From the NCBI GenBank assembly GCA_964036045.1, contig OZ038379.1, positions 4,774,001-4,838,000 on the forward strand: a stretch of DNA of 64,000 nucleotides, in the 5' to 3' direction. The stretch comes from Eutreptiella sp. 'Long Island Sound 2002'. Its lineage: Eukaryota; Protista; Euglenida. The notes below the pieces were generated by a model, which ran no database searches, was not told where the DNA came from, and saw only the letters and a program-made list of their open reading frames with translations. Shown piece by piece: positions 20,485 through 64,000 of this stretch. Within the stretch, counting starts at the first letter, position 1. Each line of letters starts with the position of its first letter. A program made the translations under genes and the position numbers.

Positions 20485-20626
20485 AATCTCGTCTTCCGGA
20501 TCTGATTCACGCTTCAAGTTCAAGCCGTCGATGGTCCAATGGATGAACGACATCGAAAAGGACTCGCAATATGCCTCGTGGTCATCGTCGGTGCAGGAGC
20601 TCCTAAAGCCCTCGTTTTATGGCCAG
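20485..20626 (+). CDS. UGGT: UGGT visible exon 1 ([47 protein letters not shown])
   Basis: CTCAG acceptor, CAG|GTCCAT donor, W-x-N-D-I-E-K-D motif. The 5' boundary is less certain. Confidence 0.85.
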
Positions 20627-23600
20627 GTCCATGCACACCTACCGGCCCCAAACCCTAGACCATTTGCGCGTGCACATGTGCGGCTGTGCCTGTCATTGTC
20701 TTTCTGCGGCATGGCCGTTAGGGTTCACGGGAAGCCAGGGAAAACATGTGCCCACCAGGAGTTGTCGGAGAGAAGGTTTCAGGAAGCAGTGCAGTCTCTA
20801 AACCCTCAAAGGTGGTTCCAGCCCTCCTCTTTTCTGGCTCCCGTCACCTCCTTAGCTCGAGCCTGAGCTCCAGATGTGGCTCTAGCCGCAGCCCTGGCTC
20901 TAGCTGCAGCTTTACCACTAGCTACAGCTCTGGATCTAGCTCCGGCGTAGGCTGTGCACTCGGTCTAGCACTGGACACACACAATCAGGAGACAAAAAGA
21001 AACCAGTGGCAATGGCAAAATGCCTGGAATGTTTCACCGCCCCCAGTGCCTCCACGAGTGACCGGCCTCTTATCCCGCTGGCGCCGTTGGGCACCCTCGT
21101 ACCTGTGGAGGGTAGTGCAAAGGCTTGGTACTGCGGGAAGTACCAGGACCCTATTTCAAGCCTCAATCTGCTCTGGGCATGAACCCGTATGATGGGCTGT
21201 GGGCAGATGAGGATGCCTCTGGAAAAGATGATCACAATGATGAAGTATGTTTTGGTGCAATTCCTTTGTATTCTTCGGGGGTGGTGGCTGTCATGGGTGT
21301 ACAATTGGGGTTCCAGCAACAAATGTTGACGCACACGGGGCGCACGCAGTGCACAGTCGTCCCCCCTGGTGCTGAGGGAAGGCCGGTGTGTTGAGGGTGT
21401 GGCGTGCGGGGTGACGACCATCGTCAGATGATGGCCGAGGGCGGTATCCTCGTCCGACCATTGTTTTCCCTACCTTTGGCCGTGCTTGCGTAAGGGGCAG
21501 ATGGGGCGAGCCCTGTGTGCGGCACTCTGCAGGTGCGGTACTCGCGGCGGAATCTCTTCACAGCCATCTACCTCATAGACCCCAGCAAAAAGGAGCAGCT
21601 GGCGGCCCAGGCTGTGGTGTCCCGCTTTATTGCCCAAAGCGCGCCCACACGCGTGGGGTTCGTGCTGGTCTGCCCCGAGACACTGAAACAAGTCCAGAGG
21701 CTGCGAGTGGCAGACGATGTGGACATCCTCAGCTCCGGTGTGTGTGGCTTGTGGGTGCCATTGTGGGTGTGCCAAGGTCAGAGATGCCTTGTTCAGGGTT
21801 TGCAGCAGCAGCAGCAAAGAGAAGGGATGGAAGACCCATGCTGCTCTTGGGCTTTCGCCGGGGTCTCGAAGTGGAGCCAGGGCCCGAGCCACAGGGCACG
21901 AGAACCAGAGCTAGTGCTAGACTGAGTGCAGAGGTGAAGCTAGAGCCAGCGCTAGAGCTCGTGGTAGACTTGGAGCCAGAGTTGGGGCTAGGGCTGCGTG
22001 CGGATCGTCGAAATTGGCCGAGGGCGAGAGGCCCACGTCAGACTTGAAGTCGAGGGCCAGCGCCCCTGCCTCTTTGCGCGACTGTCCATTGGTGCCACTG
22101 TCACTTCCGGGCTCACTATTCGGGCATGCCGGGCTGGAGTAGTGTCGACTGCTGACCAGGGGCGCGACTGCAAGAGCACTGTGGGTATCTGCGTCGCCCA
22201 ACAGGACCAGTGCCCCCCACCAAGTACTCCTTCACTATGCGCACTCTCGGCACAGCACAGCATGGCACAGCAGGGCACAGCGCAGCACATCACAGTTCCC
22301 CGCACAAAGTGCGCCAAAGAGGCCAAAAATGTGTGGAATCGAAACACCTCATTTTATTGGTTCCACATCGTCAGCACACAGAGGGCTGTTGCGTGCTTGT
22401 GCTGTGCTGTGCTGCGCCGTTGCGTGCTGCGGCGTGCCGTACTGTGCTGTACCGTGCCCCGGCCCGACACGCTGTGCTGTCACGTGATCCGGCCCTCCGA
22501 ATCCGCTTTTCAAAGCTGCCCCGCCCTCGAAAGGGAACTCTCCCAGTGCATTTGGAGGGACGCGGCGTGGGCGCATAGACGGCGCGCAGACCGTGCGTAG
22601 AGGGCGCAGAGGTCGCATAGAGGGTGCACAGGGTGCGGAGGCCGTGTATAGAGGGCGGCGTTCCTGTTTCGCATCTCGGCAGTGCAGGGTGGGGCACCCC
22701 TCCCCAGACCCCAACCCCAGTAAACAGGAGGGGTGCCCCGGGGTCGGCAGGCCAGTGGCCCCATGACATGAAGCTGTCTGCCATCCCTTCCGTTCTCCTG
22801 TCAGACAAAGCGTTGGAGAAGCAGGTGCTTCAGGGCCTTGAGGACGCAGAGGACCAGTTTGAGGTCACAGCCGAGGGCAAGACAACGCGGGTGGAGGCAG
22901 ACGTGGCCGAGCCCGACGAGTATGTGCCACAGGTGACCACGGCCACCCAAATCATTTCGTTGTTCCATTACCTCAAGGCCGTCAACAAAGAGTACGCCTT
23001 TGCATTCCTGGGCCGCATGTATTCGATCTCAAAAGGTCTGCCTGTGTTTCCCTCCCCAGGTTCTATGCATCCCAACATGAACCGGGGATGGCACCCCCTC
23101 TGAGGTCGAGTCGGTGTATCCACATTGTCAGATGAGCTTTGAGGCAGCAGGGCACCCGGCCGGCCGGTGCTTGCGAGAGGCGCACGCTGGTGGTAGATGT
23201 CGAGGGCAGACCTTCTGAGGACTATCCTCTGTCTACCGCTGACCTTGCAAGCCCATGTGGTGGTTTTGGCACAAGTCGCATTTGACTGGCTGTCTGTCCC
23301 ATGGAGCAACCCTTCCACCACAGGTTGCCCCAGACCCACCGGAGCTTGACTCATCAGCATTTGGCCCACAGGGGGAGGGATAATTTCGTGCGAAAATTTT
23401 GTGTTCAAGGAAGGTGGCGCAATTTTTCCCTGGCGAAGTTTCGGGGTGTCGGCACTGCAGTGAAGATGCCAATGGCACTGCATACCGTGGGTCCATAGTT
23501 TTGAGGGCAACTGGAACAGCAGATTCTTTCAGATGTCGTGAGTTCATGCTGCTTTCAGTGGCAAGTTGAATTGCAAATCTGTCTACCTCTGTAACAGAGC

Positions 23601-25579
23601 ATGGGCTTGCACGTTGAGGCGTGCATGAGGCATTTGGGATTTGCTTATGTTATAGCAGCAAGGAACCAACACGATCAAATCGTTTGGTATTCTTACCCTG
23701 CTGCATACCTTTTTGTGATAGGGCTTGAAGGATGATTGGGTGCTGACATGTGCATGAATGGAAAAGGAGTGACCAGGAAGGTGAAGGCGCTCAACCAGCT
23801 AGCGCTAGTCAGCTTTAGAGAATCTTCATTGTTGTCAACTGCTTCACACTGATGGGCTTAGAGTTGTTATCCAAACACAAACTGATGGGTTTTTTGATGA
23901 TTGAGGAGGACGGGGCAATGCGAAGGCGCAAGCCAATAGTGGTAATCCAGGGTTGCTTTGATGACGGCTGGCAACTGACATGTGAAAGAAAGGTGCCAAT
24001 GATTGCAGAGGTAGCACAAACGTGCCAACACTCAAATGCTGGTCTTAGAGAGTACGTTAGCGCCGGGCAAAGTTTCCCCACGCTTTGGTGTGGCCCCTCG
24101 AGTTGGGGTAAAGGAATGCCACTCTTCGGTGTGGCCACTTGAGTGGTCCGTCACGCACAAGAGGGGGATTCTTTGATTCTGAGGTGGGTGGCCATGATGG
24201 GGCCTACAAGGGTAGGGTGCATGTGATCGTCCCATTTGTGGGGCGAAAAAATGGAAATTTAATTGATCGCCAACAGTCATACAAAGTGCCTGTGCTTAGC
24301 GTTCCTGGGCTAGAGGAGGGAGTGATATTTGGGGGTAAAGCATTGTGATAGATGGCCGGAACATTCATTTGGATGCCGGACGCGCTGGGCAAACGTATCC
24401 TCTAAGGGTTGGAAGGTGTTGCGCTCAAGCCACCCAAGCTCCTGTTAAGCCGCACAAGGTATCTGTGGAGCTGTATCAAAGGACGGCTACATTGCCATGC
24501 AGAAGTAGATATTCCGGGGGGGGGGGGGGGCTGGCGCTGGGTGTAAGAGAGGGGTTTTGTGGGTCTTGCACAAGCATGCAGCTTGTCCCGGATGCGCATG
24601 CAGCGACTGCCGGCATTGCACATTTGTGTGTTGCTTGGGGAGGCAAAAATCCACGAAGACCCTGCAAACACAACAAAACACCGCGCACCCTGTTGTGGTG
24701 TGCCAAGGCAATATTCATGTGCATCTTCAGTGACACCGTGCACATGTGGAATCGATCCACACAAGTCTCCTCGGAGCTCTTAACTTGACATGTCACATGT
24801 GTACTCCATCCAGTTTTTTGGGTTGCACTCCACATTTTCCAGTTCCACTGCAATCCTTGGCTTTTCACTTTACCCCCCGTCAACCTGCATTTTACACAAT
24901 ATGGGATGTAGGATCCGAAATGATTCCAACGTCTTGTAAGCCCAAGCTTGGCTCTGTTCCGGGGATTCGGACCTGGGGGTTGAGACCGCCGTGCCATGGG
25001 GGCGTGCCACCGAATCGGAGAGCCGCCTCAAGCACTTCCATGGCCTCGGTTGCTGCTTTACCCAAGCACACTGTGCCTCAAGCGCTGCTCTGCCTGGGGG
25101 CTGGTCTGGGAAGGTGGATGGAAGGGACCCCGCACCAAGAACTCACCACCAGACCGACCGACCGCCCCAGTCCGCGTGTCTGTTGGCTCAGTGGCAGCGG
25201 GCGAGCCGTGCTGTGCCCCGTCACCGCTGTGTAGGGGAGAACGTGACGTACGCGGACATGGAGACGGCGTGGCAGGGCGTCGCGCCCTCCCGGGACCGCA
25301 GTGTCAAGCGGATGGAGGAGGTGCTGGCGGAGGGCAAGGCCGAGAAGGACATCAAGAAGACGGCGCTGTACGTCGTGGACCGCGGCCTGACCACGCAGCC
25401 CCTGTGCCTCTTCAATGGGCTGCTGATCAAAGACAAGAGCCCACGGGACACGTTTTTCGAGGGCATGCAGAAGGAACAGCCCTACATCCGTGAACTCATC
25501 CGGTCTGCCACTTCTCCAACCGTTGGTATTGGTGGAACACTGGTTGGGGATGCGGTGGTCGGGGAATGGCGGGGCAGTG

Positions 25580-25625
<46 letters not shown>

Positions 25626-28600
25626 GCGCCTAGTGCAGGTGGGACATGCTACTGTTTTTGTTCTGCGTTGCACCTGACGAGATCTAGTACATCCAGACCG
25701 GCTTTCTCTGTGCTCTGTTTGTCGCCAAAGTGTGTGTGCAGTGGGCTGTCCATGGGTTGTTGGGGGTATTGAGGGCAGTCACGGGAAGCTGTTCAGGAAA
25801 GTACCGGGGGAATCTCTTGCGGAAGGCTGTTGAGTCCACGGCAGCTGGCAGTGCGTTGCTTGCGAGCCCCCCCCCCAAAGATCGCAATGGTGTCGTTGTG
25901 TCGCGATTCCATCGAGCCGTACTGCTTCCTGCATCGCATGACTGCGGCTGCCCTCTTCCTTCAGGGACGAGCACATCGTTGACAGTATGTCGGATGTGTA
26001 CAAGGGCATCTTGGAGCACAACAAAGCCGCGACACGGTACAGCCCACAGGTCGTCAAGCCCTGTCAGTGTGTCCCTTCGCATGGCTGGGGAGGCATGCTT
26101 TGTGGTGGGGCGTGATTCAGGGGGTGTTTCGCGTGCTGTCTGCACCCCCACCACCAACTTTCTGGAAGGTAGTGGCCCCAAAGGCTTCGCTGCAGGCCCC
26201 CACTTCCCACGCAGGTGGGTCTGTCTCATCGTGTTCTGCTGCTCATTGTGTTGCGTGTTGTGTGTTGCACACAGAATGCCCGTGCCCCTGCCCTGTCTGT
26301 GCCCATGCCTGTAGATGTTTCATACTGGGATGCCCCGTGCTCCTGGCATGCCCCCGTCACATGCCCCTGTGCAAGCCTATGCCTACGTCATATGTCTGCC
26401 CCCCTGTCCATGTCATATCCGTGTCATGCCCCATGTCCCGGGCTCTGCCCCCCCCCCTGCCCCTGCGAATTCACCAGGAAATCATTTCTCCGTCGTAGCT
26501 ACTCTGAATTTCAACGTGTTCCGAGGTTACAGTCGCATTCGTGTCTAGGTCTCGGCACATAGTTGGTACACGTGCCACAAAGTGCTCACATCACATACAC
26601 ACATTTGTGTCAAAATGCGTGGTTCTGTGAAATGGGCACTATGCTAAAATATACAAACCCACCAAAAAAGAGAAAAAATGCAATAAAATGTACAACATTA
26701 AAAGCGTATGGACCTCTGCACTTGCATGCAACATGCACACAGACGCACAGACATGGCACCCTTTTTTTTTATCTGGCAAACCTCCCATCAAGAGAGCTCT
26801 TGAGGCTGTCTCAGATCAGACTTCAGTGCAGACGGCATCGGACCTCAGCCACACAATGTAAATGTGCACCCCCCTATCGGCCCGGCCCCAGAGCACCGGT
26901 GCACTGGGACGTGGTCATGATGGGGAACGGAAATGAAGTCAACAGCAGGTATTCCACCCGTCATCCATTTCGACTTTCCTGTGATTTTGCCAGTCACCCT
27001 GCATCCAGACATATCCAACGCAATCGCAAGACCCGCTGCCGGTCGTCCCACGTGTTGAGAGGCACACCCGTAGCTGAGTTGGACATTCCCCACGGTCAGA
27101 TAGTGTGTACTTTCCAGTCTTCCAGATTAGATGTGTCTTTTTTTTTTCCGGTTGTGTCCACTGTCTCCCAATTTTTTTTGCAGATCGCACCAACGTATCC
27201 CAAACACATGAGCAATGTATCCACAAGGTATCCCGTATCTCAATGCACATTCGATTGCTGCGGCCAGTTTTTTCCCATACTTGTTGATGGTGATGTTTAT
27301 CAATTGCCAAACTGACCGCACCACACACATGCAACACAGTGTCTCCGAAATGTATCCACAATGTATCCCCTGGTACTTGCTCCCGTTACACATATTGGGC
27401 ACCAGAAGGTGAGGAAGTGTGGAAGAACATCCCACTGCTTCGCCATTTTGTCTGTCCTGGCAGGCCCCCCTTGCGCTGTGCAGGTTTACAACGTGGGCAA
27501 CATCCACGTCTGGCAGCCCAACGCCCCCGTGCTGGCCACGCTGCGGTACGTCTACTCCTCCCGCTACAACGGCACGATCACCGACGTGACCCACGTGCTG
27601 GTCGCGGACTGCAACACGCTGGAGGGCCTCGACGCCATCGTCCAGGGCCTCAACCACTTCGTGGCGGTGGCCCCCATGCGGTCCCGCATGGCCCTGGTCT
27701 ACCACAGCGCCAGCCCCTCAGCGGTGGTGCCGGCGGCCCTGCAGGCCCTCACCGACGTCACGGCGGGGCTGCCGGAGCAGGCGTCCACGCTGCTGCAGTT
27801 CGTGGTACTGCTGCGGAAGGCGCTGCTCAAGGGCGGGCCCGCACTGAGCCTGGGGGTCGTGCAGGACATCCTGAAGGCCATGGACGCGGCGCAGGGTGGT
27901 GAAGAGGAAGAGGACGGTGTGTGTGTGATGTGTGGGAATCAGGGTTGTGCTTAGTGTGTGGCCTACGGGACAGGGCAGGCGGGGGTTATGAGGGCAAAAC
28001 AAAGTTTGTGTACCCAAAATGGGTTTCTCATTTTTGGATCTGTATTTAAAATTTGATTTTTCCGCAGAGGAATTTTTTTTGGTTTTGGGTGGGTGCGTGG
28101 TTTAGCCGGGGGGGGGGGGGTCCGCCAGATCACCCCCACCCCCCTGTGGGTAACCACATCCCTGGTGGGAATGGCCTGGCAGAGAGCATGCAGTTCCGCA
28201 GCCGGGAGGTCCTTTCACAACCTTGGCGCAGCCAGTCCCGAAATTCCCATTTTTCCAGTTGGCTAGTTCGCCTGGCAAAATTCATCAAAGGAACTTGAGG
28301 GAAAGGTGGCGAGGTTGTGGAAAAGTGGGGGAAATGGGACTAGGAAAAATTGGAAATTTTGTCCCAAATTGTCCCAGTTTTCTCCAATTTTTCTCCCGTT
28401 TCCTACCAATTTCACACATTTTTTTCTACACTCCCCACAATGTATTTTTTTGGCAATTTCCCACAATTCCCAAATTCCCCCATTTCCCCCCATTTCCCCC
28501 CATTTCCCCACTTTTCCCATTTTCCTTCACCTCTGCGGCTAGTTGGCTAATTCGGCTGCGGCTAACGCCGACGCCTGCTTTCATTTCTGTTGATCGGGTG

Positions 28601-31600
28601 CGTCCGTTGGCGCCTTTTTGGGGCGCGTCTACTTGTGTCACTTTGCACTAATGTGCGGGCCACAAAGGGAGTGTCGTGGTACTGGTGTGAGACCGCCACC
28701 GCTTGGGCAGAAGCTGCGAGGGCACAAGAGGCAATTTTGCTGCAGCAGCGGGGCAATGGGCGTGGGCGGGTGCATCGTCAGGATCTGCTACGGTCGCAGT
28801 CTGACACTGACGCGGTCGAGGGGTTGGGGTTGCATCCCTGTGTCATCAGGGACAGGGCCCCCAACTGTGCACTGCGCATTGGTGAGGGGCTGTTGGGGGA
28901 TGGTGCTCAGTCGGGTCCCGGCGGGCAGGGGGTGGTGCAGGGCGGGTGACCGCGTGCGCTCATATGTCTCTGCATGTCCCTGCAGGCAATGTCTACAGGC
29001 GCAAGGCAAAGCTGGCCATCAAGTTCGATATCAAGGCTCTCCTGAAGCAGTTCAACGCCGGACAGGTGTTTGCTGTGCCCCCCACACACGACCCCTGGCT
29101 CCCACAAACACAACCGTGTCCACGTCCACAGCCAGACCGCGTATGACTGCCAGTTGTGCTCGGCGCTTAAGAGTTCACGGCTCCACACCGGCCCCTCCCT
29201 GCTCCCCCCCTCCACCCCCTCTAACCCTTGGGGCTGGACACTTGGATGTGGTGTGGAGGCATGCTGGGTACTCCCCAGCACGAACGGGGCGGAAAAGGGG
29301 GTTGGCTATGCCACCTGTGACCAGACCATATCCGTTGATCCTGAGCCACTCCTCAGCAGGCCACCCGCCCCTCTTGGATGCCAGGCGCCAGGGAGATCAG
29401 GTTGCAGGCGCGTGGCTTCTCTCCATGTGCTGAGGATTTGGTGGTGGGGGGCCCGTACCCAGCGATGAGCCACAAGCGACATCGCTGTCCACCGTAACCC
29501 AAATCTTTTGCTCCTTTGATCTTTTGATCCTTTGCTTTTTTCTGTGATCTCTCTGAGGTATCTACAGCGGATGGTGGGGCGGGCATCCCGTGAACACCCA
29601 ACCAGTGGGGAACCGCTTTGGCACACCATCTGCGCCTCGCACACTTTGCTCTCGCCTGTTCCTTGTTTGCTCATTTGGGCTGCAAAGTAAGTCCTGCTGT
29701 ACACAGAGCACGCACGGCACAGCACAGAGCGTACACAGAGCGCGCACAGCACAGCACAGCACAGCGCGTACTGACCTGCAGGTTTTGAGAGTTTTGAGAG
29801 TTTTAGAAAGCAAACACTACCCCCCCCCCCCCCACTATGGAACGATACATTTGTGCTGTGCTTTGATGGATCATTGTTTTCTTCACTTTGTCTTCTGATG
29901 TCTACTGTTGAACCCACTGACGAGGGGACAACACAACCCAAGAGGGACAAGGAGACAGCCAGGAGTACTGCAGACTGTTTGCAGTGGGAGTGGAAGCGGA
30001 AATGTGAGGAGGAGGAGTAGCAACACATGACCTCCCATGAAATGATTCTGTTGTGTTCGTCTTTGGAGGGTGTCGGGACATTCTGGCTACTGCCCACCTA
30101 CTCTGGGGCCTGTGCAAAGGCCAGGGCTGTCTCTGGGGTTGGGACCAGGACGCCGACTTGGTCTAGGGCTACATCAAAGCCAATGTCGGGGGGCTGGGAC
30201 AGGCCTGGCAAATGCTGCCCCAGTGCGGTGGTGTGGGTGTGTGGGCGTGTTGGGCCTCGTACCAGGGCCCATCGTGCCCCTCCCCCTCCTGGCCTGGCCC
30301 ATGACAGTGTGGCCGGCCGGTGGACGGCGGCCGACCTTCCGCGGACGGCGTCGGGCACAACACCGGACGGCGGTCGGCGAGAAGCTGACCGCAGCTGGCG
30401 GCTACCTGACAGCAGCCCCTGGCTGACCAGGCCGGGGTTTTGCGGTCGGGTGGTGTTGTTCCGTCTGAAAGTGCTGTGCTGCTTTGACACTCGCGACGGC
30501 CCTCCTCCCTGGTGTTGGGCGTCAGGGAGGTGTGTCCATCCAACAGCAGCTCCGGCCAGAGGCCCTGCGCCTCGAATATGGCCAGTGGCCGCGCCCGCCC
30601 CCCCCAACAGGCGGTCAGGGAGTGCGTGCAGGTCCTGGAGGCGCCAGCGGTACAGGCCCATGGCTGGTGATGCCATCCTCGACGGGTGTTTGCACCGGCG
30701 CTCGCCGGTTCGGGGGGGGGGGGGCGTGGTCCACTGTGAGTACATGGCAGGGGACGCCAGGTTTTCAACTCGGGGGGGGGGGGGGGGGGGGGGGGGATAG
30801 AGCCCCCCAAAGGGGGGGGGGGGCGGGTGGGAGAAGGGCTCAATTGACAGGACCATTGACCAGTTATTCTGAAGTCTGGTGCCAAAGGCGCCGAAAATTT
30901 TTCGAGCCCTTGAAAATGGTCAATTTTTTTTTCACCAAATGCAATGGCACATGATGGCTTTTCTGAACCCCCTCGACGCGCTGATTCCAAAAATACCATT
31001 TTCATTTTTTGCCGAAATTTGGGTCCAGGTTACCTCTGGGCCCACGGGTCAGTCTCGGTAGGATTTTGGGTGGCCCGTCAATTGGGCCTTTTTCGGGGGG
31101 GGTCTAGCCAGAGGGCTGTATCCCCCCCCCCCCCCCCCCGCAATTGAAAGCCCGCCCACCCCAGCAAGCCCAGCACTGCGCCCATCCCCTTCTCTGCAGG
31201 GCCCTGACGACATGGCCGCGACCCTCGCGGCCCATCGCGACTTCGGCAGCGCCTTCAGTGCCGTCCCGGTGCTCGTCACCAACGGCCGCATCCTGCAGCT
31301 GCAGGGCAAGGAGGCCCTGCTGACGGAGGACTACAGCATTCTGGAGCATTACGAGCGGGAGCAGCGCACCACGGGCCTCATGGCACTCCTGAAGGAGCAT
31401 GCATTCATCGGCGATGACACACCGCCCCCGGAAACCAGTAGGTGGTGCTACCGCTACCCCCCCCCCCCCCCGCCCTATGCACAACAAGCGGCATCCATCC
31501 GTGAGCGAGGCGCATGCGGCTGATCTCGGCAGGGTAAGGGGGTCTGGACGCCGCTGGGACCAGGGCATTGGTGGAGGGAAAGGGGGATGCAGGAGGGGCC

Positions 31601-34600
31601 ATGGGGGGGCGGTTGGAGCAGTGGGTACTGCTGAGCAGTGAAGCGGCTGTTTGGCGGTTGCAAACCGGTTGGCAGGGGGTGGGCGTGCAGGTTGGTGGTT
31701 TACATGTGGAAGGGTGTTGTGGAGGGACGCCCCTCCAACCCCCCCTTTCGAGCGGGCCTGGCCGCGCCGCCAGAAGTCCCGAGAAGCTCAGATTCAGAGA
31801 GGGCACATGCCGGCGTCCTCGGCACACAAGACATTGGAACGGTGGGCCACAGACCCCCCCCCCCTCCCATGAGGCAGCGTACGCGATGGGGGTGGGCGTG
31901 ATATGACGGGGGACTGCACAATGGCGGGACGGGGCTGTTCTCGCCCCAACCCCAGCCCCAGCCACAGCCCCAGCCACAGCCCCAGCCCCAGCCCCAGCCC
32001 CAGCCCCAGCCACACGCCCATGAACCGCCAAACACCAGCCGCAAGGCCCGCGTCATCGGTCCGAGCGCCGCCCGGAGGCTGCCGCTGGCGTGTATGGGCG
32101 TGGCCTGATTCGCTGCCTTGCACTTGGGCCCGCTGAACGACGTGCGCCGATTTTGGAATGCAAAGTCATGTTGGGCTTGTGGAGGGGCTGCAAAGCGAAG
32201 GGGCCTCACCAGCGATGGATGGTGTCACTCGACAGCTCAACGGCCCAACAATAATGACACGTCCAAATGGCCACGTATCCGCTGCCGTATCGGGGGTCCG
32301 ATGGTGGGGAAATTGGGGCCTGGTGGTGCGGGAGGGGGGGGGGGGGGGGGAAGGAGGTGTGGCACCAACCGGCCCCCTGCGCCCCGTCCGCCCCGCGGTC
32401 GCTCAGCCCCCCTGGGCGCCGTGGTAACGGTCTGTATTGTCTCTTGGCATCAGGGAAGGTCATGGGCAGGAGGGTGGGGGCAGGGATGCGCTTGAAGGGG
32501 AGGGAGGCCAGGGGGTGACTTCCAGAGCGGCTGAAAGGCGGTTGACGGCGGTTGGAAAAAGCGGTTGCGGGGCAATTGCTGGCGGTTACACAACGGTTGC
32601 AGTTGAAAAGCAGTTGGAACGGCACTGACCGACGAGTTGGGGCGTGGACCGCCGGCACGGAGCACGTCCCTCCGCATGGCCCTACCATGTGGTTGCCCCC
32701 TCCGTGCCCCCATCGCGTCGCTTCCCGCCGCATCGCTGTTTGCCAGGCGGCTGGCGGACACGATCTGCGCCATCGCCAGCATTTTGACCAGCGACTGGTT
32801 CAGCAACGGGGAGCGGGTGGCAACCATCCCCCAACGCTTGGAGAAGGACACTGAGGCCCTTCACGGTTTTGGAGTGCCTTCGCAGCCCAACTTGGCAGCG
32901 CCGGGGGAGGTATTGTGGGCCGTTGCATGGGACCGCGGAGGACTGGGAGGGAGGGCCGCAGTGCTGTTGACCTACGCTGTGGCATCACGTTTTTTTGGGG
33001 GGGTCTGCCCTGCCCCCACCCCCAGGGCTGTGGTTAATGCAAGGGAACACAAACTCCTGCCGGTACGCCCCGACAGCAACAGAGCACCGGCATGTGGGAA
33101 CGTCACCGCAGAGTGGCAGTGCAATGGGTCCAAGTGTCTGCACAACTCGGATCCGGGGGGGGGGGGTTACGGGTAGGGCCAGCCCCCACCCCTCCAGACC
33201 CCCCCAACCTACACCACCTGTACAACTCTGCCTGCTTTTCAACAATGGCTTTCAGACAACGTCATCTTCACTTGCTCCATGTCTTCAACTGCTCTCTCGG
33301 TGCCTTCGCTATTTCATTCGCACGTTTCCTGGGATGCCCTGCGTTGATTTTCTCCCACAGGGAATGGCAAATGGGACTCTACCGCTCAGAAGGAAACAGG
33401 GAATTCAAAAACATCCCCCAAAAATCCAAATCTGTTGACCCCCTTCCCCCCCCCCAGCCCCTCTTGAGCCCCTGCCCACGCCGCAGGGGTTGGGTCCGGA
33501 AGTATGTTTCACCGCCCCCCGCGCGTCCAAGCACGTGCACGACTCGGACAAAAGAGACGCACCTCCGTCCCATGACCGGGCCCAGGGGCACGAGGCGCTT
33601 GGCCTGCCCGTCACTTGCTCTTGGACCACCACTTCCTGTCTCTTCTTTCTCTTGGTTTGCGACCAAAGTGCGATGTGTTCCGGTCTGCTGCGGCAGACGC
33701 CCCCGCAAAACATGCACCCCGAGACATATGCCCGTCCCATGACAGGGCCATGCCTTCGGCGCCCCTTTCGTCTGATGGGGCTCCAAAATGAGGGCGCTTT
33801 GCTGACCTCAGCCCCGACTGAACGTGCCACGCCACAACCGCCCACAGGCTCCCAATCAAAATTGTAGATGGGCTCAGTCTTGAGCATACACTACTGTTGC
33901 CGTTGTCAACAGGCCACTATTCTGAGCATCGTAGCAGTGATCGACCCCTTGAGCACCGCTGCCCAGAAGCTGTCCACGTTCTTGTCTTCTCTGCACGAAT
34001 CCTTCAACTCCCACATCACTGTGTATTTTGCTCCTCACTCACAGGTCTGGTGTGTGTGTGTGTGTGTGTGTGTGTTTGCGCGCGGTTGCAGCGGCTAACA
34101 GGGTGCACGCAGAGCCAGGACACATACTAGATCAGAGGCATGTAAGCGCTGCTGCATGAGGCGGGCCAAGTTTTAACTCTCAATCCAGTCAATGATAATG
34201 GAGGGCAATCACATGACCCTCCACATGACACACTTATGCTGAACCTCATCCACTTTCATCATCACTGTCCGTCAGAAAGGCGCCTAGCCTCATGACTTTC
34301 TTTTGATGTTGACCTGACGAGCTGTTGTTACGGTCAGTGCTGTGCTCTCGCTGTGCGCTTCATCTCCTCATGCTGCGTGTCTTTGATTCTTTGTTCCTGT
34401 GTGTCCTGCTCAGCGAGCCGCCCGCCCCTACACATGAGCATGCAGCTTTGATAATTGGTGTGGTCACCTTAACGAGATCAGGTGCACCGCTGTTGGTGGG
34501 GCAGACTGCGAAGGCCAGTTCAATACCATAAGCCCAGAGGTGGTAGCCACCGAAATGCGCGAGGCTGCAGCGTGGCTCTCAAAGAAGTGATGCTGGTGTG

Positions 34601-49600: not shown

Positions 49601-52600
49601 CCCCGCGCGCCTGCGGGATCCCTGAACAACATCTTCACGGACATCCGTCTCTGGCAACACTCCCCCACCTTGTGGACCCTTGACGGCCCTTCATGGCACC
49701 CCCTGGGCCCAAGATTTGTGCCGGACATCCGACGGCAGGAACTTCCCCATTCATGCATGCTGGAAGGGTTTAGGCCTTGGTGTAAATGATGGGCCGCCTG
49801 GGCGTTGGCCGTTGGGAGCACCAACCGCATGGGGCAGATGCTGGCAGGATGTCCATTGTGGCCGGGGGACGCGAACCAGCTCGGCCCATGGGGCAGCGGC
49901 ATGCGCCCCGTGCAGTGCCGGGGAGCCGAGGCCCGGAGCCGGGGGCTGGGGGTAAGGGGGTTACCGGGGAGGAGCGCATGGGGTGGTTTGGACAGGCGGA
50001 TGCCCCCTGCCACTTCTGTGGGGGGAGAGGGCCGCTGGGCCGGGGGGAGGTGTGGAGGCACCGGAGGGAGGGGCGCGTGCGACCGGCGCTGTGGCCGGGA
50101 AGGGAGGCGGATGCGGCGGAGGAAGGAGGGGATGCTGTTTTTGTCCGTTGCATGTTGTTGGTGTGGCGAGACGAAACTCCACGAAACCCAGTGACCTTTT
50201 TAAGCACACTTCTATTCGTTTTTTTGAATTTTTTTTAAAAAAATCGTTCTGCTTGCCGGTACTGAATTTTACTTAGCTACTGAACACCCCATTGTTTCTC
50301 CTCAGATTCTGGAAATCCGGATTCTGGAGGGATCATTTGCGAGGGGCGCCGTACCACATCAGCGCGCTGTACGTGGTGGACATCAAGAAGTATGTTCCGC
50401 TGCGACGCGCAATCCGAGTGGTGTGGCGTGCGCACTATGTGGACCGTAGGTGGGCTGTGGGCACCGGACCCTGAGTGCACATGCCCTCCCGGAGCTGCAC
50501 AGCCCGGGAGTGTTCTGCTGATCGTCGCGCCTTGCGGTCTGTTCTTGAGCGCGGGGGACGACGTGGCCGAGCCCGTCGCGCGTGTCTGTCCCTAGCGTGT
50601 GTCCTTCCGCCGCGGGGGTCGGTCCGTCGCGGTTGTCCCGTCGCCAGCCCGTGCCTGTGATGCGGGAAGCGAGAGGAGAGGGCGGCGCATAGGGCGGGTG
50701 CGTGCGTGCGTGCGTTTCTCCCGGCTCCAGCGGCTCATCGGGCGTGCCTGCATTCACGAGGTCAAGCAGCGTGTCTGCCCTGCCGGGCTTCAGTTTTCCT
50801 GCTCTGCCCTGACTGCCGCGTGAGTTCTGCCACATGTCATTGGCACAGACACACAGCCACGGGGGGGGGGGTTTCCGTGTCGGGCCGGACCCCCCCCCCC
50901 CCTCCTCAGAACCCCCCAACCCACACACAACGGTGATCGATGGGGGACAGCCGACTTGGGCGCCAGCGGCGCTTGGAACTTTGTTTTGGCCTCTGTGGAC
51001 CGGGGCACAGAATCCCCGTCCCCGTCCCCATCCCCCCCCCCCCCCTCCCCCCTCTGTGGTGAATGGTGATGAATGACTCTACCTCCCCCGAACTTGTGTC
51101 TATTCAAAATGCTCCGAATGAAACGGGGGGTTCAAAAAGGCCCCCAAACCCCGACAAAAAATTGAACCTCCCCCCCCCTCTGGACCCCCTGCCCACGCCG
51201 CGGGGGTTGGGGTCCGGAACTGAACTGAACCACCCCCCCCCCCCTCCCCCATGCACACAGCTGTGACCTCAGCTACGTGGGTGGATCGGGGTGTGGGCCG
51301 GGGACCATGCAACTCCGTCTTCCTTGTGTTGCTCAGATTCCGACAAATGGCCGCTGGAGACAACCTCCGGATGATCTACGACAACCTGAGCCAAGACCCC
51401 AACAGGTCCTGTGGTGCAAGGGCTGGCACTGCGCCGCCGTGGGGGGGGCTTGCCTTGCAGCTTCTCAGGGTCAGAGGCCATGTCTCTGGGCGGTTTCTCG
51501 GCTTCCTGCTTCTTGTTCCATCGCACACGGCCCTACGCACGGGCTCCAACTGCTGTGCAATAGCAATGTCCAGCGCGCAGTCGTTGCATCGTCAATCAAC
51601 GAATGTCCTGCTTTTTGGTGCGGCGGTTAATGTTGTGCACGCTTCATCCGTTGGCTAGCCTGCTACCGACGATGTCCTTCGCAGTCTGGCAAACCTGGAC
51701 CAAGACCTGCCCAATTACACGCAGTACATGATCCCCATTCACTCGCTCGAGCAGGAGTGGCTGTGGTGTGAGACGTGGTGCAGCAACAAGACGAAGGTTT
51801 GCGACGTCCTGGCACTACCTTTGCCTGTGCCCCCTCCCCCCCCCCATCGGAGCCCTCGCCTGTTGAGCCCTTTGCAGTGCGACATGCTTCGACCCCCCCC
51901 GCCCTCTACCCCCTCCCCCGCGCGGAATCTGCGTGTGGCAGGTCTCACATCATTTGGGTGGAGAGCACCCTCCAGAGCCCAACCGTCTGGGACTCACTGA
52001 GGGAGAAGGCCTGGCAGCGCCGGCAGGGGAGTGGACGCTACGGGGGCAGTATCCGGCAATGGTGAGCAATGGGCCAGATCTTCCACATACATTCCACCCC
52101 CCCCCCCCACCACCACCATGCCATTGCCGTTGGCACACTGCGCGAACCGGGAAAACCAAAAAACAACAGCGGCAAACTGCCCGGACATGCAGCGCACCAC
52201 CGATCGGTGACACTTGGGGATCCGCCACCCCCCGGCCCCTGTGTTACAGTTCCCACATCATTTGTGGTGGTGGGCACCCTCCGAACTTCACGGTCTTGGG
52301 AATGACTGAGTGTGTGACGCATGGCCGGTGCCGGCGTGGGGCGGGACGCCACAAGGCTGTCCCACGCTCGTCTACCCAAAAAATTTCCCCAGTGGCTTGG
52401 GGAAAACAGTGCGAACAATTTCTTTCTAAAACCTCAAACCGGTGCACACACCGGCAAATACCAACCGGCGCACTTACTCCGCCTTTATGGCAGCCCCCCC
52501 CCCCCCCCCCAACCACACACTGCCCGCAGGCACTCCACAAAACACAACGGAGTGCGTCAAACCGGAATACCAACTGGCAAACACCACTTTTAATGGTGCA

Positions 52601-53868
52601 TCCCCCCCTGCGCGGGTCCAAACCGCCCACTGTGCCTCACCCTTTTCTGAAGAGTGATTCGGAATCTATGGGGATGTGTCGGGACCAGCACATACAACAC
52701 TCGTGGGGGCAGGGTCTGTGCTCCATGCAGCAACGATCCCCCGCTGCCCCTCTCTGCGCACCTTCGTTCAGCCCACCTTATTCAGCCCCCCCCCCCCCCC
52801 AACATCGGATGTGATGTTGAACCCGTACGCGTCCCGTCCACAAGCAGGACAATGTTTCCGCAGGTTGGCATCCCAGTATCAGGGGGTGCACTTAGCGCAG
52901 TGCCCGCACAGTGCAACTATTTGGGCATCTCGCCGTACTAGAAACCAGCACTTTGTGGTACCAGGGGTATCATTGTTGTTTGAAAACAGGTATTTTGATG
53001 CTTCTTCTGCATTGGGGAAGTGCCATGTTTGTACTTTCACCCAATGTCACGCATTTTCACTCGGAAGCTGGCCTTATTTTGAGGGCATTCGGAGGGTGTG
53101 TGGTTGCGTGTGTTTGCGCCTCTTCGGGGGGAAATTCAGTCTGAAAGTAGTGCGCAGTGCGTGCGCAGTGCAAGGCCCCCCCCTCAGTAGAAGCGTGATC
53201 CTGACTGCAGGCAGGCTTGGGGCCAGCAGGTTGCCACAGAAGTCCGGCGGTGGTGGCACGTGTGGCATTGTGTTGTTTGCGGCTTCTGTACAGCAAGCCC
53301 GGTAAACTGCGATTTCATATGCGGTGGTCATCAGTACCTTTATTTGTATTTGTAGTTGTCTGTTTATATATTTTGTATTTGCATTTGTTTTTGTGTCCGT
53401 ATTTGCATTTGCATTTGCATTTGTCCTCTGGCATGGCCACACAATGGACAAATACGCACCTTAACACCTCTGAGGTGCCATCCAATGGTACTTGCGGACA
53501 GTGGACGGGCCACAAAGGGGGTAGCCCCCGCTTTTTGAATGCGGCCAATGCTAGGCCAAACCTCATAGTGTCGCATTTGCCCCCCCCCCCCCGATTTGCA
53601 TTTACATTTGCATTGGCAAACACCTGCAATCCTGAACACCAGCAATCCCCCATCATCTTTCAAAACCCTCAGCAGCCCTTCCTCCATAACTGGCCCCGCA
53701 CCGGTCCCCTCATGTCTGTAGTCTATGGCCAAGACCATTGACCTCTGCAACAACCCGCTGACGAAGATGCCCAAGCTCGAGAACGCCCGGCGCATTATTC
53801 CTCAGTGGGATGAGTACGACGCGCACATCCGCAAGTTTGAGGAAGGCTTGGGCCTGGCCAGATATTAG
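20485..53868 (+). CDS. UGGT: UDP-glucose:glycoprotein glucosyltransferase, spliced and 5'-incomplete (20 visible exons, about 1185 aa)
   Basis: Hand-spliced exons total 3559 nt and stay in frame across 19 GT-AG introns. Family motifs seen: [108 protein letters not shown]. Confidence 0.97.
21533..21737 (+). CDS. UGGT: UGGT exon 2 ([17 protein letters not shown]...RVGFVLV...DILSS)
   Basis: CTGCAG| acceptor, G|GTGTGT donor, phase 0 to 1. Confidence 0.9.
22248..22480. repeat. (GCACA)n / (TGTGC)n low-complexity tracts
   Basis: GGCACAGCACAGCATGGCACAGC at about 22250, with complementary TGTGCTGTGCTG at about 22395-22480. Similar tracts occur at about 29700-29770 and 41860-42205. Confidence 0.7.
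22805..23035 (+). CDS. UGGT: UGGT exon 3 (DKALEKQ...[13 protein letters not shown])
   Basis: TCAG| acceptor, AAG|GTCTGC donor, phase 1 to 1, matching both neighbours. Confidence 0.85.
24076..24146 (+). repeat. Isolated one-to-two-copy instance of the 41-bp repeat family
   Basis: CCCACGCTTTGGTGTGGCCCCTCGAGTTGGGG matches the units at 58372-58860. Confidence 0.85.
25235..25502 (+). CDS. UGGT: UGGT exon 4 ([13 protein letters not shown]...CLFNG...[10 protein letters not shown])
   Basis: GTAG| acceptor, CG|GTCTGC donor, GC3-rich codons. Confidence 0.92.
25582..25622 (+). repeat. (GT)n microsatellite
   Basis: Read directly, about 20 units. Confidence 0.95.
25965..26049 (+). CDS. UGGT: UGGT exon 5 ([28 protein letters not shown])
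   Basis: CTTCAG| acceptor in phase 2; CAG|GTCGTC donor gives the phase 0 that exon 6 needs. Confidence 0.82.
27484..27916 (+). CDS. UGGT: UGGT exon 6 (VYNVGNIH...[14 protein letters not shown]...EEEED)
   Basis: GTGCAG| acceptor, G|GTGTGT donor. An alternative same-phase donor follows 27895. Confidence 0.88.
28196..28561. mobile_element. Possible small non-autonomous element with 9-bp terminal inverted repeats
   Basis: CCGCAGCCG (28196-28204) and CGGCTGCGG (28553-28561) bound a G/A-rich half followed by a C/T-rich half. No clear target-site duplication (TSD). Confidence 0.35.
28986..29065 (+). CDS. UGGT: UGGT exon 7 ([26 protein letters not shown])
   Basis: CTGCAG| acceptor, CAG|GTGTTT donor, phase 1 to 0. 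Confidence 0.82.
31200..31441 (+). CDS. UGGT: UGGT exon 8 (GPDDMAAT...VLVTNGRI...[10 protein letters not shown]...)
   Basis: CTGCAG| acceptor, AG|GTGGTG donor, TNGR motif. Confidence 0.9.
31945..32012. repeat. (CCCAGC/CACAGC)n hexamer repeat
   Basis: Read directly. Confidence 0.85.
32747..32909 (+). CDS. UGGT: UGGT exon 9 ([13 protein letters not shown]...NLAAPGE)
   Basis: GCCAG| acceptor in phase 2, GAG|GTATTG donor in phase 0. Confidence 0.82.
33913..34044 (+). CDS. UGGT: UGGT exon 10 ([20 protein letters not shown]...APHSQ)
   Basis: AACAG| acceptor, CAG|GTCTGG donor, DPLS motif. Confidence 0.93.
34050..34075 (+). repeat. (GT)n microsatellite just after the exon 10 donor
   Basis: Read directly. 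Confidence 0.95.
35562..35696 (+). CDS. UGGT: UGGT exon 11 ([14 protein letters not shown]...SKILTM)
   Basis: CGCAG| acceptor, ATG|GTACTG donor. Confidence 0.95.
36942..37326. mobile_element. MITE-like element with about 29-bp terminal inverted repeats, copy 1
   Basis: Begins GAAAATTGCTTTGCGGGTGGGGGATGGCA and ends TGCCATCCCCCCCCCCGCAAAGCAATTTTC; contains internal hairpins. Confidence 0.6.
37535..37860. mobile_element. MITE-like element, copy 2, with an internal deletion of about 60 bp
   Basis: Same terminal inverted repeats; lacks the CTTTGTTTTG...TTTTGGCCC segment present in copy 1. Confidence 0.6.
40790..41860. repeat. 61-bp variant of the GC-rich minisatellite
   Basis: Unit approximates CCCGCCCCGGCGTGCGCGAACCAGCCACGACCGGGGCGAGCTGCCTGTCACGTGTCCCCCT; GTGCGCG occurs at 40921 and 40982. 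Confidence 0.95.
41860..42205. repeat. (GCACA/GCAGT)n low-complexity tract
   Basis: Read directly. Confidence 0.75.
43566..43698 (+). CDS. UGGT: UGGT exon 12 (GVDEPESW...DLDNIKL...YELEHLILT)
   Basis: CTCAG| acceptor, G|GTGTGC donor. Confidence 0.95.
44861..45091 (+). CDS. UGGT: UGGT exon 13 ([16 protein letters not shown]...[12 protein letters not shown]...HNE)
   Basis: TACAG| acceptor, G|GTGTGC donor, phase 1 to 1. Confidence 0.94.
46704..46961 (+). CDS. UGGT: UGGT exon 14 (TWKRTAV...[15 protein letters not shown]...LNVFSLAS)
   Basis: ATTAG| acceptor, CAG|GTCTGG donor. Confidence 0.93.
47308..47474 (+). CDS. UGGT: UGGT exon 15 ([10 protein letters not shown]...[15 protein letters not shown]...FQ)
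   Basis: CTCAG| acceptor, CAG|GTCTGG donor; start of the GT24 domain. Confidence 0.97.
48351..48592 (+). CDS. UGGT: UGGT exon 16 ([33 protein letters not shown]...FVDADQ...TEGFR)
   Basis: CACAG| acceptor, CG|GTATGT donor; contains the DxD motif. Confidence 0.98.
48634..48659 (+). repeat. (GT)n microsatellite
   Basis: Read directly. Further (GT)n at about 48921-48946 and (CA)n at about 49081-49110. Confidence 0.95.
50306..50389 (+). CDS. UGGT: UGGT exon 17 ([27 protein letters not shown])
   Basis: CTCAG| acceptor, AA|GTATGT donor. Confidence 0.96.
51337..51405 (+). CDS. UGGT: UGGT exon 18 ([22 protein letters not shown])
   Basis: CTCAG| acceptor, AG|GTCCTG donor. Confidence 0.96.
51685..51796 (+). 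CDS. UGGT: UGGT exon 19 ([37 protein letters not shown])
   Basis: CGCAG| acceptor, AAG|GTTTGC donor. Confidence 0.97.
53722..53868 (+). CDS. UGGT: UGGT exon 20 ([15 protein letters not shown]...[20 protein letters not shown])
   Basis: TGTAG| acceptor, KTIDLCNNP motif, in-frame TAG at 53866-53868. The true 3' end is uncertain. Confidence 0.9.
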
Positions 53869-57640: not shown

Positions 57641-57966
57641 ACATGCTTTGGCTTGCCCCATACCTCCCCCCCTTTTCGTTGGCCACATTTTTAGGCACAA
57701 GTAATCCCTTCATATCACCGAAACCCCCTTTTATTTAGGTGAAGGGTTTGCTTATTCCACCTCACAGGTCCGCTTCAGTTAGACAAATGTTGCCCCTTGT
57801 GTTGAGGAGATTGACTTATGTAGCCAATGTGCCACTTTTGGGCCAATTCTGATCATGGCGGTCGTGAAGGAGCCAAATTTTTTTATTTTAAGGACCGCCC
57901 TTAAGGACCACCCCTCAGGGCATTTTACCACTGGCCCGACGCAGGCCACTCCTGTCCCCATTTTTT

Positions 57967-58370: not shown

Positions 58371-58371
58371 G

Positions 58372-61639: not shown

Positions 61640-61928
61640 ATGGCCAACGCCCCCACGACACACGAGATGCCAAAGGGGCTTCTCCGCATGCCCTCAATGG
61701 GCATCTGCCCACCGTCTCCCCTGTGCGCTGCCGTGGACGGCCCGAAGGTGCGCCCCCGCCCCGGCCCCCACTACGTCCACTGCACGGACCATCAGTCGCC
61801 GTTCACGCTGCGCATCATCACCGGCAACAGCCACCCGGAGCTCGCGGAGGACGTGGCCGCGCTCGTGGGCTACGAGATGCGGAGGACCGAGGATGGAAGC
61901 CTGTGCACGCCGAAGGTGTTCGCCAACG
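61640..61928 (+). CDS. PRPS: Ribose-phosphate pyrophosphokinase (PRPP synthetase), first visible exon
   Basis: LRIITGNSHPELAEDVAALVG...KVFANG matches the PRPS N-terminal motif (I-x-S/T-G-N-S-x-P-E-L-A...F-x-D/N-G). Donor AACG|GTATGC and GC3-rich codons. The start codon is uncertain and no later exon was found in the window. Confidence 0.85.
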
Positions 61929-64000
61929 GTATGCCTGTCAGTGTTAGCCCCCCCCCCCCCTTTTGGGGCCAGAGAATAAAGATGCACTCATGCCTGACTG
62001 TGGAGTGCATTACCTCTGGTTTGCATTTGTCTGTTTTTTAATTAGGTCACACCCCCCTTTTGGGGCCAGTCACTTGTGGTGGTGCCAGAGGGTGGTTGGA
62101 CCGCCCCCAGCGCGTTGCGGCCCCCACCCCCGGCCCCCCTCGACGTCGACCCTGAACCTGATGCGTTCCCGGCCCAGCAGCAGGGCATCAGTACTGTGAA
62201 CAGTTGTATGCTGCATTCAGTTGTGAACCTCGCATTTTGAGCAGAGGTTGTAATGTAATGAGATCACCCCCCCCCCCCCCCAGTGATGTGTTGGAACGGC
62301 CGTACACCGTAGGAGGAGGGGGGGTGTACCCCCCCCTGGACCCCCCTCGCCCCCCCTCCTCCCCTTCCAATGTTTGAGGCTGACAGCCAAAATTTTGCTT
62401 CGAAGAGGATTTAAGGCCAAAAATTTTCAGCCCGCCTTCGGCAGGGACCATAGGGGGTCCTTAGGAGGAGGGGGGTCCCGGCCAAACCCCCCTCCCCCAG
62501 ACCACTCTCCCAGAAGGTCGGTCGAGACATCAGAGCACATGGCTCCTGCACCCAAGGTCCCGGTTCGAATCCCAAGATTCGAGGGTCCCCTCCCTGACCG
62601 GCACCCACTCAAGAACCCCTGGTTGAGAGTCCGGGCCCGGGGTCTGACCGATGGTTGGACGCACGTCATGCGCCAGAGTGCCGGCGAGCGGTCCTCAGGA
62701 CTCATCGCGGGGATGTGCTTAGTGCTTGTCCCACCCTAGATGGGGGCACGCATATGGGGGCGCGTAAACGGCGGCGTGTGGATGGGGGCTGGTATATCGG
62801 GGCGTAGATGGGGGTGCGCAAATGGGGACATGTAGATGGGGGCGGGTAGATTGGGGCTCGTAGATGGGGGCACATAGATCGGGGCGGGTATATGGGGGTA
62901 TACAGATGTGTCCATCTCTGACCACTCGCTCGTGCTCATTTGGTTAAGGTGGAGAACTGGGGGCCATGCTGCCCCCCGACCCACACCACAACCCACGGTT
63001 GCACGTTGGTACATGCCGCATTTCAAGAAATTTCACCGCACACATGTCTAACATGGTGCCCCACCAATTGGTCCCCCCTTTGATTCAGGCAGGTCTATGG
63101 GTAGGAAGCCCCCCATACGGGGGGGGGGGGTGGCGAGGGCAGAAAAATATTGTTGTGCAGACCACCCTCCACTCCAATGTGCCAAAATCCTTCAAACCCC
63201 GAAACCCCCGCAGCGATGGATTGGCCGCAATCAAGCTGACAACCCACCCGGAGTGTCATGCAACGGTGGCCCATCTGAAGCACCCACCCGGGGCCGCGTG
63301 CTCCCGCCCGTCAGATGGATGTTCGATTTTTACTGTGCTTGTCGGAGGACAACGGGATTTGGGCAACCACCCGAACCCAGAAGAGTTTCCTCCAGCGGGA
63401 ACTGCAAATTTTGAAGAGAGAGAAAAATATTCAGGGGCCCATTTTAGCCCCCCCCCCCCCAAAACCAAAAAAAACGATCACCCAAAATCCCCGAACCGTC
63501 GCCTCCCGATGTTCCAACAACGGCGCTGTCTACGCGCGCCCTGAGAAGACACGAGCGGTGGCGCTACCCCAGTGCCCGGGCCATGTCTGATGACCTGCAC
63601 GCCTGGACCACCGGACAAGCGGCATCACGTGGCTGGGCAGCGGTTGGCACCCCCGAAATACCATCCCCAAGCCCCAAATCACCGGAAAAACTTGGTCTTC
63701 ACAGACGACCAGCCGATGCACCCGCGAGATGCCACGGTTCGAAAAGTTGCGGCAACAACGCCTCGTCTTGTTCTGAGAGAGGGGGGGGGGGGGTGCATCA
63801 GAACCAGACATGCCACTAGCGTTTGGCAGGGAAAGTGTTTCTCGGTAGCCATCGGCCCCGTATCAAAGGCCACTCAGTAATACCCGCCCCCTGCACCACC
63901 GGAACTCAGTGGGAACGTGCTGCGTCCAGCGTGTGGCTCAGTAGGACCCTCCACCTGATCATGTCTGAGCTGGCAGACGCTAGTGGCAAGTCCGATCGGG

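What the first reader, a model, noticed from the sequence alone, without database searches (positions are those of the whole stretch)
20624..61934. Non-canonical 5' splice-site consensus G|GTNTG with A never at +4: candidate loss of U6 m6A (METTL16) dependence
Seen in 20 inferred donors (19 UGGT, 1 PRPS): GTCCAT, GTGTGT, GTCTGC, GTCTGC, GTCGTC, GTGTGT, GTGTTT, GTGGTG, GTATTG, GTCTGG, GTACTG, GTGTGC, GTGTGC, GTCTGG, GTCTGG, GTATGT, GTATGT, GTCCTG, GTTTGC, GTATGC. Of these, 13/20 are GTNTG, 15/20 have T at +4, 0/20 have A at +4, none is GTRAG, and 19/20 have G at -1. Known: positions +4 to +6 pair with the U6 ACAGA box, m6A on U6 by METTL16 accommodates A at +4, and budding yeast (GUAUGU) lacks this mark. 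Inference: this lineage has a U+4-type spliceosome with a free +3 position, implying unmethylated U6 and/or a variant U1 5' end.
Basis: partly seen in the sequence, partly recalled or inferred. Interest (0 to 1): 0.75.

Follow-up and report, generated by a model that had tools for sequence, protein, structure and literature searches.

The report
Euglena's known GTGTG-type splice donors
The unusual intron starts are real and RNA confirms several of them, but they are the ordinary, already published splice signal of Euglena; the proposed link to a lost RNA-methylating enzyme fits the literature but was not tested.

Summary
Observation confirmed. The window holds the last 20 exons of a UGGT gene (+ strand, 20485-53868). 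RNA contigs from three runs confirm five whole introns and two more exon ends with no mismatches. The other 13 donors rest on protein homology and an unbroken reading frame. T at +4 occurs in 14/19 donors and UG at +4/+5 in 12/19, both well above background. A at +4 is 0/19, which alone is not significant (p=0.056).

The pattern is not new. Earlier agents of this scan call the genome Euglena. Gao et al. 2024 (BMC Genomics 25:595) report GTGTG as the consensus of 11,527 E. gracilis GT-AG introns, state that it pairs with the Euglena U1 5' end, and describe the C-rich acceptor tract also seen here. This scan also noted the same T+4 pattern before, on other DNA of this genome (MSH5, note s1-210353, unchecked).

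The METTL16/U6 m6A idea is an untested extension of Parker et al. 2023. Published data fit it: snRNP27 was not found in E. gracilis, no METTL16 was found in the sampled Excavata, and kinetoplastid introns start GTATG. I could not search Euglena for METTL16 or obtain its U1 and U6 sequences here. U1 pairing alone may explain U+4. Verdict: a known feature with a reasonable side hypothesis.

The parts
20485..53868 (+). 3' part of a UGGT gene (UDP-glucose:glycoprotein glucosyltransferase): 20 exons, 19 GT-AG introns, stop codon at 53866-53868. Corresponds to residues ~497-1714 of E. gracilis EG_transcript_196 (P0151). The 5' exons lie upstream of the window or are too diverged to find.
   Evidence: tblastn of P0002 and P0151; Pfam Glyco_transf_24 on exon 16; frame check of all exons without stops; spliced RNA contigs
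20627..21532 (+). intron 1, donor CAG|GTCCAT, acceptor CTGCAG
   Evidence: homology and frame
21738..22804 (+). intron 2, donor CCG|GTGTGT, acceptor CCTGTCAG after a C/T-rich tract
   Evidence: sequence read; homology and frame
23036..25234 (+). intron 3, donor AAG|GTCTGC
25503..25964 (+). intron 4, donor CCG|GTCTGC
26050..27483 (+). intron 5, donor CAG|GTCGTC. An in-phase GT three bases downstream (GTCAAG) would add one residue that the homologues lack.
27917..28985 (+). intron 6, donor ACG|GTGTGT
29066..31199 (+). intron 7, donor CAG|GTGTTT
31442..32746 (+). intron 8, donor TAG|GTGGTG, acceptor TTTGCCAG (corrected from 32779 after reading the alignments)
32910..33912 (+). intron 9, donor GAG|GTATTG
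34045..35561 (+). intron 10, donor CAG|GTCTGG
35697..43565 (+). intron 11 (7.9 kb), donor ATG|GTACTG. Holds a 63-bp minisatellite of about 74-76% G+C at 36500-41861.
43699..44860 (+). intron 12, donor CGG|GTGTGC
45092..46703 (+). intron 13, donor AGG|GTGTGC, acceptor ACATTAG. RNA contigs begin at 46703/4.
46962..47307 (+). intron 14, donor CAG|GTCTGG, confirmed by RNA
   Evidence: joint 46957>47304 (cut +4) in X4, X5, X7
47475..48350 (+). intron 15, donor CAG|GTCTGG, confirmed by RNA
   Evidence: joint 47471>48348 (cut +3) in X4, X5
48593..50305 (+). intron 16, donor CCG|GTATGT, confirmed by RNA
   Evidence: joint 48591>50305 (cut +1) in X4, X5, X7
50390..51336 (+). intron 17, donor GAA|GTATGT (the only donor without G at -1), confirmed by RNA
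   Evidence: joint 50389>51337 in X4, X5, X7
51406..51684 (+). intron 18, donor CAG|GTCCTG, confirmed by RNA
   Evidence: joint 51402>51682 (cut +3) in X4, X5, X7
51797..53721 (+). intron 19, donor AAG|GTTTGC. RNA contigs end exon 19 at 51796.
61931..61936 (+). putative PRPS donor ACG|GTATGC, not verified here
   Evidence: sequence only; no Pfam hit for the exon

Best explanation
These are ordinary conventional (U2-type, GT-AG) introns of a Euglena nuclear gene. Their donor pattern G|GU-N-U-G is the lineage's normal 5' splice-site consensus. It is published for Euglena gracilis as GTGTG, where all five bases are reported to pair with the Euglena U1 5' end (one pair is a G-U wobble). By standard U6 geometry, U+4 and G+5 can also form Watson-Crick pairs with the A and C of the U6 ACAGA box. 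Shown here: the donor positions (RNA for 5 whole introns and 2 further exon ends, homology and frame for the rest), the enrichment of U+4/G+5, the C-rich acceptor tracts, and no pairing between intron ends. Inferred from the literature: the U1 pairing and the presence of an ACAGA box in Euglena U6.
For: Exon map and frame-consistent model. Enrichment statistics. Acceptor tracts with C 41% and T 27%, as in the 'C-rich py tract' of Gao et al. 2024 (abstract). No excess pairing between 5' and 3' intron ends (19 z-scores scattered about 0, range -2.0 to +1.4), so these are not nonconventional or intermediate introns. Gao et al. 2024: GTGTG consensus of 11,527 GT-AG introns and its pairing to E. 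gracilis U1. Earlier agents call this genome Euglena.
Against: The species is not proven. The window's UGGT is only about 59% identical to E. gracilis EG_transcript_196, so it is a second paralogue or this is another Euglena species. I could not read the Euglena U1 or U6 sequences myself: Breckenridge 1999 is not held and the window has no snRNA gene. In this gene +3 is mostly C (8/19) rather than the published G. All 19 introns are conventional although 57-72% of Euglena introns are reported as nonconventional, so this gene is not a random sample of introns.
Confidence: 0.87

Rival explanations
1. The reader's mechanism, which does not exclude the explanation above. Euglenids (perhaps all Euglenozoa) lack the U6 m6A writer METTL16 and the tri-snRNP protein SNRNP27K. 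The central A of the U6 ACAGA box would then be unmethylated and select U at +4, as in budding yeasts.
For: Parker et al. 2023: in Saccharomycotina, loss of METTL16 and SNRNP27K goes with a switch from +4A to +4U, and no METTL16 hit was found in the Excavata they sampled. Gao et al. 2023: snRNP27 is one of only three snRNP proteins not found in E. gracilis. Kinetoplastid cis-introns all start GTATG. In this window, U+4 is 14/19 and A+4 is 0/19.
Against: Failure to find snRNP27 in a transcriptome is weak evidence for a short, fast-evolving protein. E. gracilis U6 is reported as very like human U6 over its internal 58 bases, so the METTL16 target site is probably still there. Reported U1 pairing with U+4 may explain the preference without any change in U6 methylation. 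In a tunicate, U6 m6A is low although METTL16 is present, so gene content does not predict the mark.
Confidence: 0.45
2. The pattern is a by-product of base composition: a GC-rich genome with few A's and many (GT)n/(TG)n runs gives GTNTG by chance.
For: A follows GTN at only 14% of background GT sites, so 0/19 A+4 is not significant alone (p=0.056). Two donors (introns 2 and 6) sit in GTGTGTGT runs.
Against: UG at +4/+5 is 12/19 against 12% in the background, and T+4 is 14/19 against 27%. The same consensus appears in 11,527 published introns.
Confidence: 0.04
3. The donors are misplaced, and some introns are really nonconventional Euglena introns forced into GT-AG.
For: Most Euglena introns are nonconventional. 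Four of the five RNA-supported joints can slide by 1-5 bases. Thirteen donors rest on homology only.
Against: All 19 give a frame-consistent model collinear with the homologues. Intron ends do not pair.
Confidence: 0.04

Closest known systems
Conventional GT-AG introns of Euglena gracilis (Gao et al. 2024, BMC Genomics 25:595; Breckenridge et al. 1999, PNAS 96:852, from my own knowledge of its abstract)
   Same: GT..AG borders, donor consensus GU-G/N-U-G, C-rich polypyrimidine tract, introns of 0.3-8 kb, no pairing between intron ends.
   Different: In this one gene +3 is mostly C rather than G. The species or paralogue is not proven identical, since the UGGT is only ~59% identical to EG_transcript_196.
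+4U 5' splice sites of Saccharomycotina that lack METTL16/SNRNP27K, such as S. cerevisiae GUAUGU (Parker et al. 2023, eLife 12:e91997)
   Same: U at +4 and G at +5. SNRNP27K is reported as not found in E. gracilis.
   Different: Yeasts keep the canonical U1 ACUUACC and are intron-poor with a fixed A at +3. Euglena is intron-rich, has a variable +3 and is reported to have a U1 that pairs with U+4. The METTL16 status of Euglena is unknown.
Kinetoplastid cis-introns (BMC Biol 2024, 22:281)
   Same: Same phylum. Invariant GTATG, so U+4 and G+5.
   Different: Only 2-3 introns per genome. U1 5' end is AACUCACCUGCA, which by my own alignment does not pair with U+4. A is fixed at +3.
Nonconventional and intermediate introns of euglenids (Milanowski et al. 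2014, 2016; Nomura et al. 2025)
   Same: Same genomes. Some begin with GT/GC.
   Different: They have variable borders, CAG/CTG at +4..+6 and -8..-6, and paired ends. None of these features is seen here.

Membership tests
Conventional (U2-type) spliceosomal introns of Euglena | GT (or GC) at the 5' end and AG at the 3' end | tested here: met
   19/19 are GT..AG. Five whole introns are fixed by RNA joints.
Conventional (U2-type) spliceosomal introns of Euglena | Donor consensus GTGTG, complementary to Euglena U1 | tested here: met
   T+4 14/19, G+5 12/19, UG 12/19. This matches the published consensus. The pairing to U1 itself is taken from the paper and was not recomputed.
Conventional (U2-type) spliceosomal introns of Euglena | C-rich polypyrimidine tract before the AG | tested here: met
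   Positions -25..-4 of the 19 acceptors: C 171, T 112, G 88, A 47.
Nonconventional/intermediate euglenid introns | Stable pairing that brings the two intron ends together; CAG at +4..+6 and CTG at -8..-6 | tested here: not met
   Duplex energies of the 5' end against the 3' end do not differ from internal controls (19 z-scores about 0, range -2.0 to +1.4). No CAG at +4..+6.
METTL16/SNRNP27K-less '+4U' spliceosomes (as in S. cerevisiae) | Preference for U over A at +4 | tested here: met
   14/19 U and 0/19 A in this gene. The published logo is GTGTG.
METTL16/SNRNP27K-less '+4U' spliceosomes (as in S. cerevisiae) | No METTL16 orthologue in the genome | not testable with these tools
   No tool-given METTL16 query and no access to the rest of the genome. 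The literature only says none was found in the sampled Excavata.
METTL16/SNRNP27K-less '+4U' spliceosomes (as in S. cerevisiae) | No SNRNP27K, or loss of its Met141 | not tested
   Literature only: snRNP27 was not found among 166 E. gracilis spliceosomal proteins.
METTL16/SNRNP27K-less '+4U' spliceosomes (as in S. cerevisiae) | Unmethylated central A of the U6 ACAGA box | not testable with these tools
   This needs an experiment on U6 RNA.

The most novel reading that the evidence does not exclude
Euglenids would be an intron-rich lineage, independent of budding yeasts, in which a +4U splice-site code goes with loss of both METTL16 and SNRNP27K. In addition, U1 would have changed to pair with U+4. 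Parker et al. 2023 looked for such a compensatory U1 change in 230 yeast genomes and did not find it. This would extend their association outside fungi and break the link between +4U and intron poverty.
Probability: 0.35. Interest if true: 0.55.

Novelty: already known. Interest (0 to 1): 0.27.

Why it matters
As an observation it adds little. The GTGTG donor consensus of Euglena, its fit to U1 and the C-rich acceptor tract are in print, and this gene is one more example, now with RNA support. Its use is practical: gene models in this assembly should be built with a Euglena-specific donor matrix (U+4, G+5, C-rich tract) and not with GTRAGT. The side hypothesis has some value. If Euglena lacks METTL16 and U6 m6A, it would be a non-fungal, intron-rich test of the METTL16/SNRNP27K versus +4 A/U rule. 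That test needs only a profile search of the gene set and one RNA assay.

Tried and rejected
1. Looked for an exact transcript-derived protein of this gene to fix all junctions. The full-length search found only relatives (EG_transcript_196 at ~59% overall, P0002). The exon 6 search found only the genomic ORF. Junctions 1-13 therefore rest on homology and frame.
2. Looked for snRNA genes in the window with Rfam: none.
3. Tried to read Breckenridge et al. 1999 for the U1 sequence: not held. Other Euglena papers do not print it.
4. Looked for the UGGT exon upstream of the 850-bp satellite in 1-2200: no credible hit.
5. Looked for published intron sequences, to recompute the share of A at +4 genome-wide. 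The supplement holds only figures and one table.
6. Considered using E. coli RlmF as a stand-in query for METTL16. Rejected, because the word-based search would return only bacterial RlmF.
7. A local-alignment score for junction choice mis-ranked some sites (intron 2, the intron 8 acceptor). These were corrected by reading the alignments and the sequence.
Full report
WHAT IS THERE. The window has three parts. From 20.4 kb onward the DNA is GC-rich and intron-rich. Earlier agents of this scan identify the genome as a Euglena. A phmmer search with one exon and a follow-up search gave full-length euglenid UGGT proteins: P0002 and P0151, the latter being E. gracilis EG_transcript_196. tblastn of these against the window maps 20 collinear exons on the + strand from 20485 to the stop at 53866-53868. 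Exon 16 matches Pfam Glyco_transf_24 at E=1e-39. The exons correspond to residues ~497-1714 of P0151. The 5' exons were not found in 1-2200, so the intron that ends at 20484 contains the satellite.

CHECK OF THE DONORS. Public runs were found that hold only the exonic words of 46650-52650. Contigs of three such runs (X4 and X5 guessed to be RNA, X7 an estuary metatranscriptome) were laid on that stretch. They match the exons with 0 mismatches and skip five segments. Each segment has exactly one GT..AG reading: 46962-47307, 47475-48350, 48593-50305, 50390-51336 and 51406-51684. The contigs also start exon 14 at 46703/4 and end exon 19 at 51796.

For introns 1-13 I used homology, phase and absence of stops. 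I corrected two of my own placements, the intron 2 donor to 21738 and the intron 8 acceptor to 32746. A frame check carried exon by exon shows no stop across all 20 exons. The PRPS donor at 61931 is plausible but unverified.

IS IT MORE THAN CHANCE? Among the 19 UGGT donors, T is at +4 in 14, G at +5 in 12, UG at +4/+5 in 12, A at +4 in 0, and G at -1 in 18. At +3 the counts are C 8, G 6, A 4, T 1. The background is all 2021 GT sites of the same strand and region: T4 0.27, TG 0.12, A4 0.14, G-1 0.26. One search gave p=2e-4 for T+4, p=3e-6 for UG and p=5e-10 for G-1. That run had intron 2 one base off, so the true counts are slightly higher. The absence of A at +4 alone is not significant (p=0.056), because A is rare in this DNA. 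The acceptors have C-rich tracts (C 171, T 112, G 88, A 47). [quoted passage not shown] These are therefore conventional introns, not the nonconventional or intermediate type of euglenids.

WHAT IS KNOWN. Gao et al. 2024 (PMC11170887) extracted 28,337 E. gracilis introns. For the 11,527 GT-AG introns the 5' consensus is GTGTG. [quoted passage not shown] 1999 among others). They also report the C-rich polypyrimidine tract as a special feature. Another first-stage note reports the same pattern in MSH5 of this genome (21/24 T+4, not checked by me).

THE METTL16 IDEA. Parker et al. 2023 (PMC10581693) showed for 230 Saccharomycotina that the largest 5' splice-site variation is an A/U switch at +4. 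They found that +4U goes with loss of METTL16 and SNRNP27K, while the U1 ACUUACC and U6 ACAGA sequences stay invariant. They named a U1 change from pseudouridine-5 to A as a possible compensation but did not find one. They found no METTL16 hit in the Excavata species they sampled.

Three further published points bear on this. The Sun laboratory reports that snRNP27 is one of three snRNP proteins not found in E. gracilis. It also reports that E. gracilis U6 is very like human U6 over its internal 58 bases. In kinetoplastids every cis-intron starts GTATG, and the U1 5' end is AACUCACCUGCA.

Together these make a Euglenozoa-wide U+4/G+5 code without METTL16 and SNRNP27K a reasonable hypothesis. 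In the paper library no article links METTL16 to Euglena. It remains untested. I had no tool-given METTL16 query and no access to the rest of the genome. The window holds no snRNA gene. A tunicate shows that U6 m6A can be low with METTL16 present. If U1 really pairs with U+4, that alone may drive the preference.

SPECIES CAVEAT. The window's UGGT is only ~59% identical overall to EG_transcript_196, and 60-85% identical in the catalytic exons. No transcript-derived protein of this exact gene is in the protein collection. It is either a second, weakly expressed UGGT paralogue or the orthologue in another Euglena species. Either way the donor consensus, the C-rich tract and the earlier agents' spliced-leader findings place it with Euglena.

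One oddity remains. All 19 introns are conventional, while 57% (E. gracilis) to 72% (E. agilis) of Euglena introns are reported as nonconventional. If intron types were independent, this would be very unlikely (0.43^19), so intron type must cluster by gene.

VERDICT. Its nature is already known. Interest is low to moderate.

Noticed in passing
window 1064-20272: About 19 kb of a tandem satellite with an 850/849-bp unit, 43% G+C and constant GC skew. It lies directly upstream of the first UGGT exon seen (20485), so it is apparently inside a UGGT intron. TRF missed it because the period exceeds 500.
   Followed up: partly
window 36500-41861: A 63-bp (partly 61-bp) minisatellite of about 85 copies and roughly 74-76% G+C fills most of the 7.9-kb intron 11 of UGGT.
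   Followed up: no
window 20485-53868: All 19 introns of this gene portion are conventional GT-AG, although 57-72% of Euglena introns are reported as nonconventional. Intron type seems to cluster strongly by gene.
   Followed up: partly
window 20485-53868: This UGGT is only ~59% identical to the E. gracilis UGGT transcript EG_transcript_196, yet it is spliced and present at low depth in RNA contigs of three runs, including estuary metatranscriptomes. It is a second UGGT paralogue or belongs to a different Euglena species.
   Followed up: partly
window 50875-52814 (also 48834-49021): Introns 16, 17 and 19 carry many C12-C17 homopolymer tracts and short dispersed repeats. These collect very high depth from unrelated contigs in all laid runs, so depth there is meaningless.
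   Followed up: partly
window 57953-58860: Two adjacent tandem arrays (103-bp unit x 3.8 copies, 41-bp unit x 12 copies) lie between UGGT and the PRPS start.
   Followed up: no
window 53722-53868: The UGGT reading frame ends ...EGLGLARY, without a recognisable KDEL/HDEL-type ER retrieval signal.
   Followed up: no
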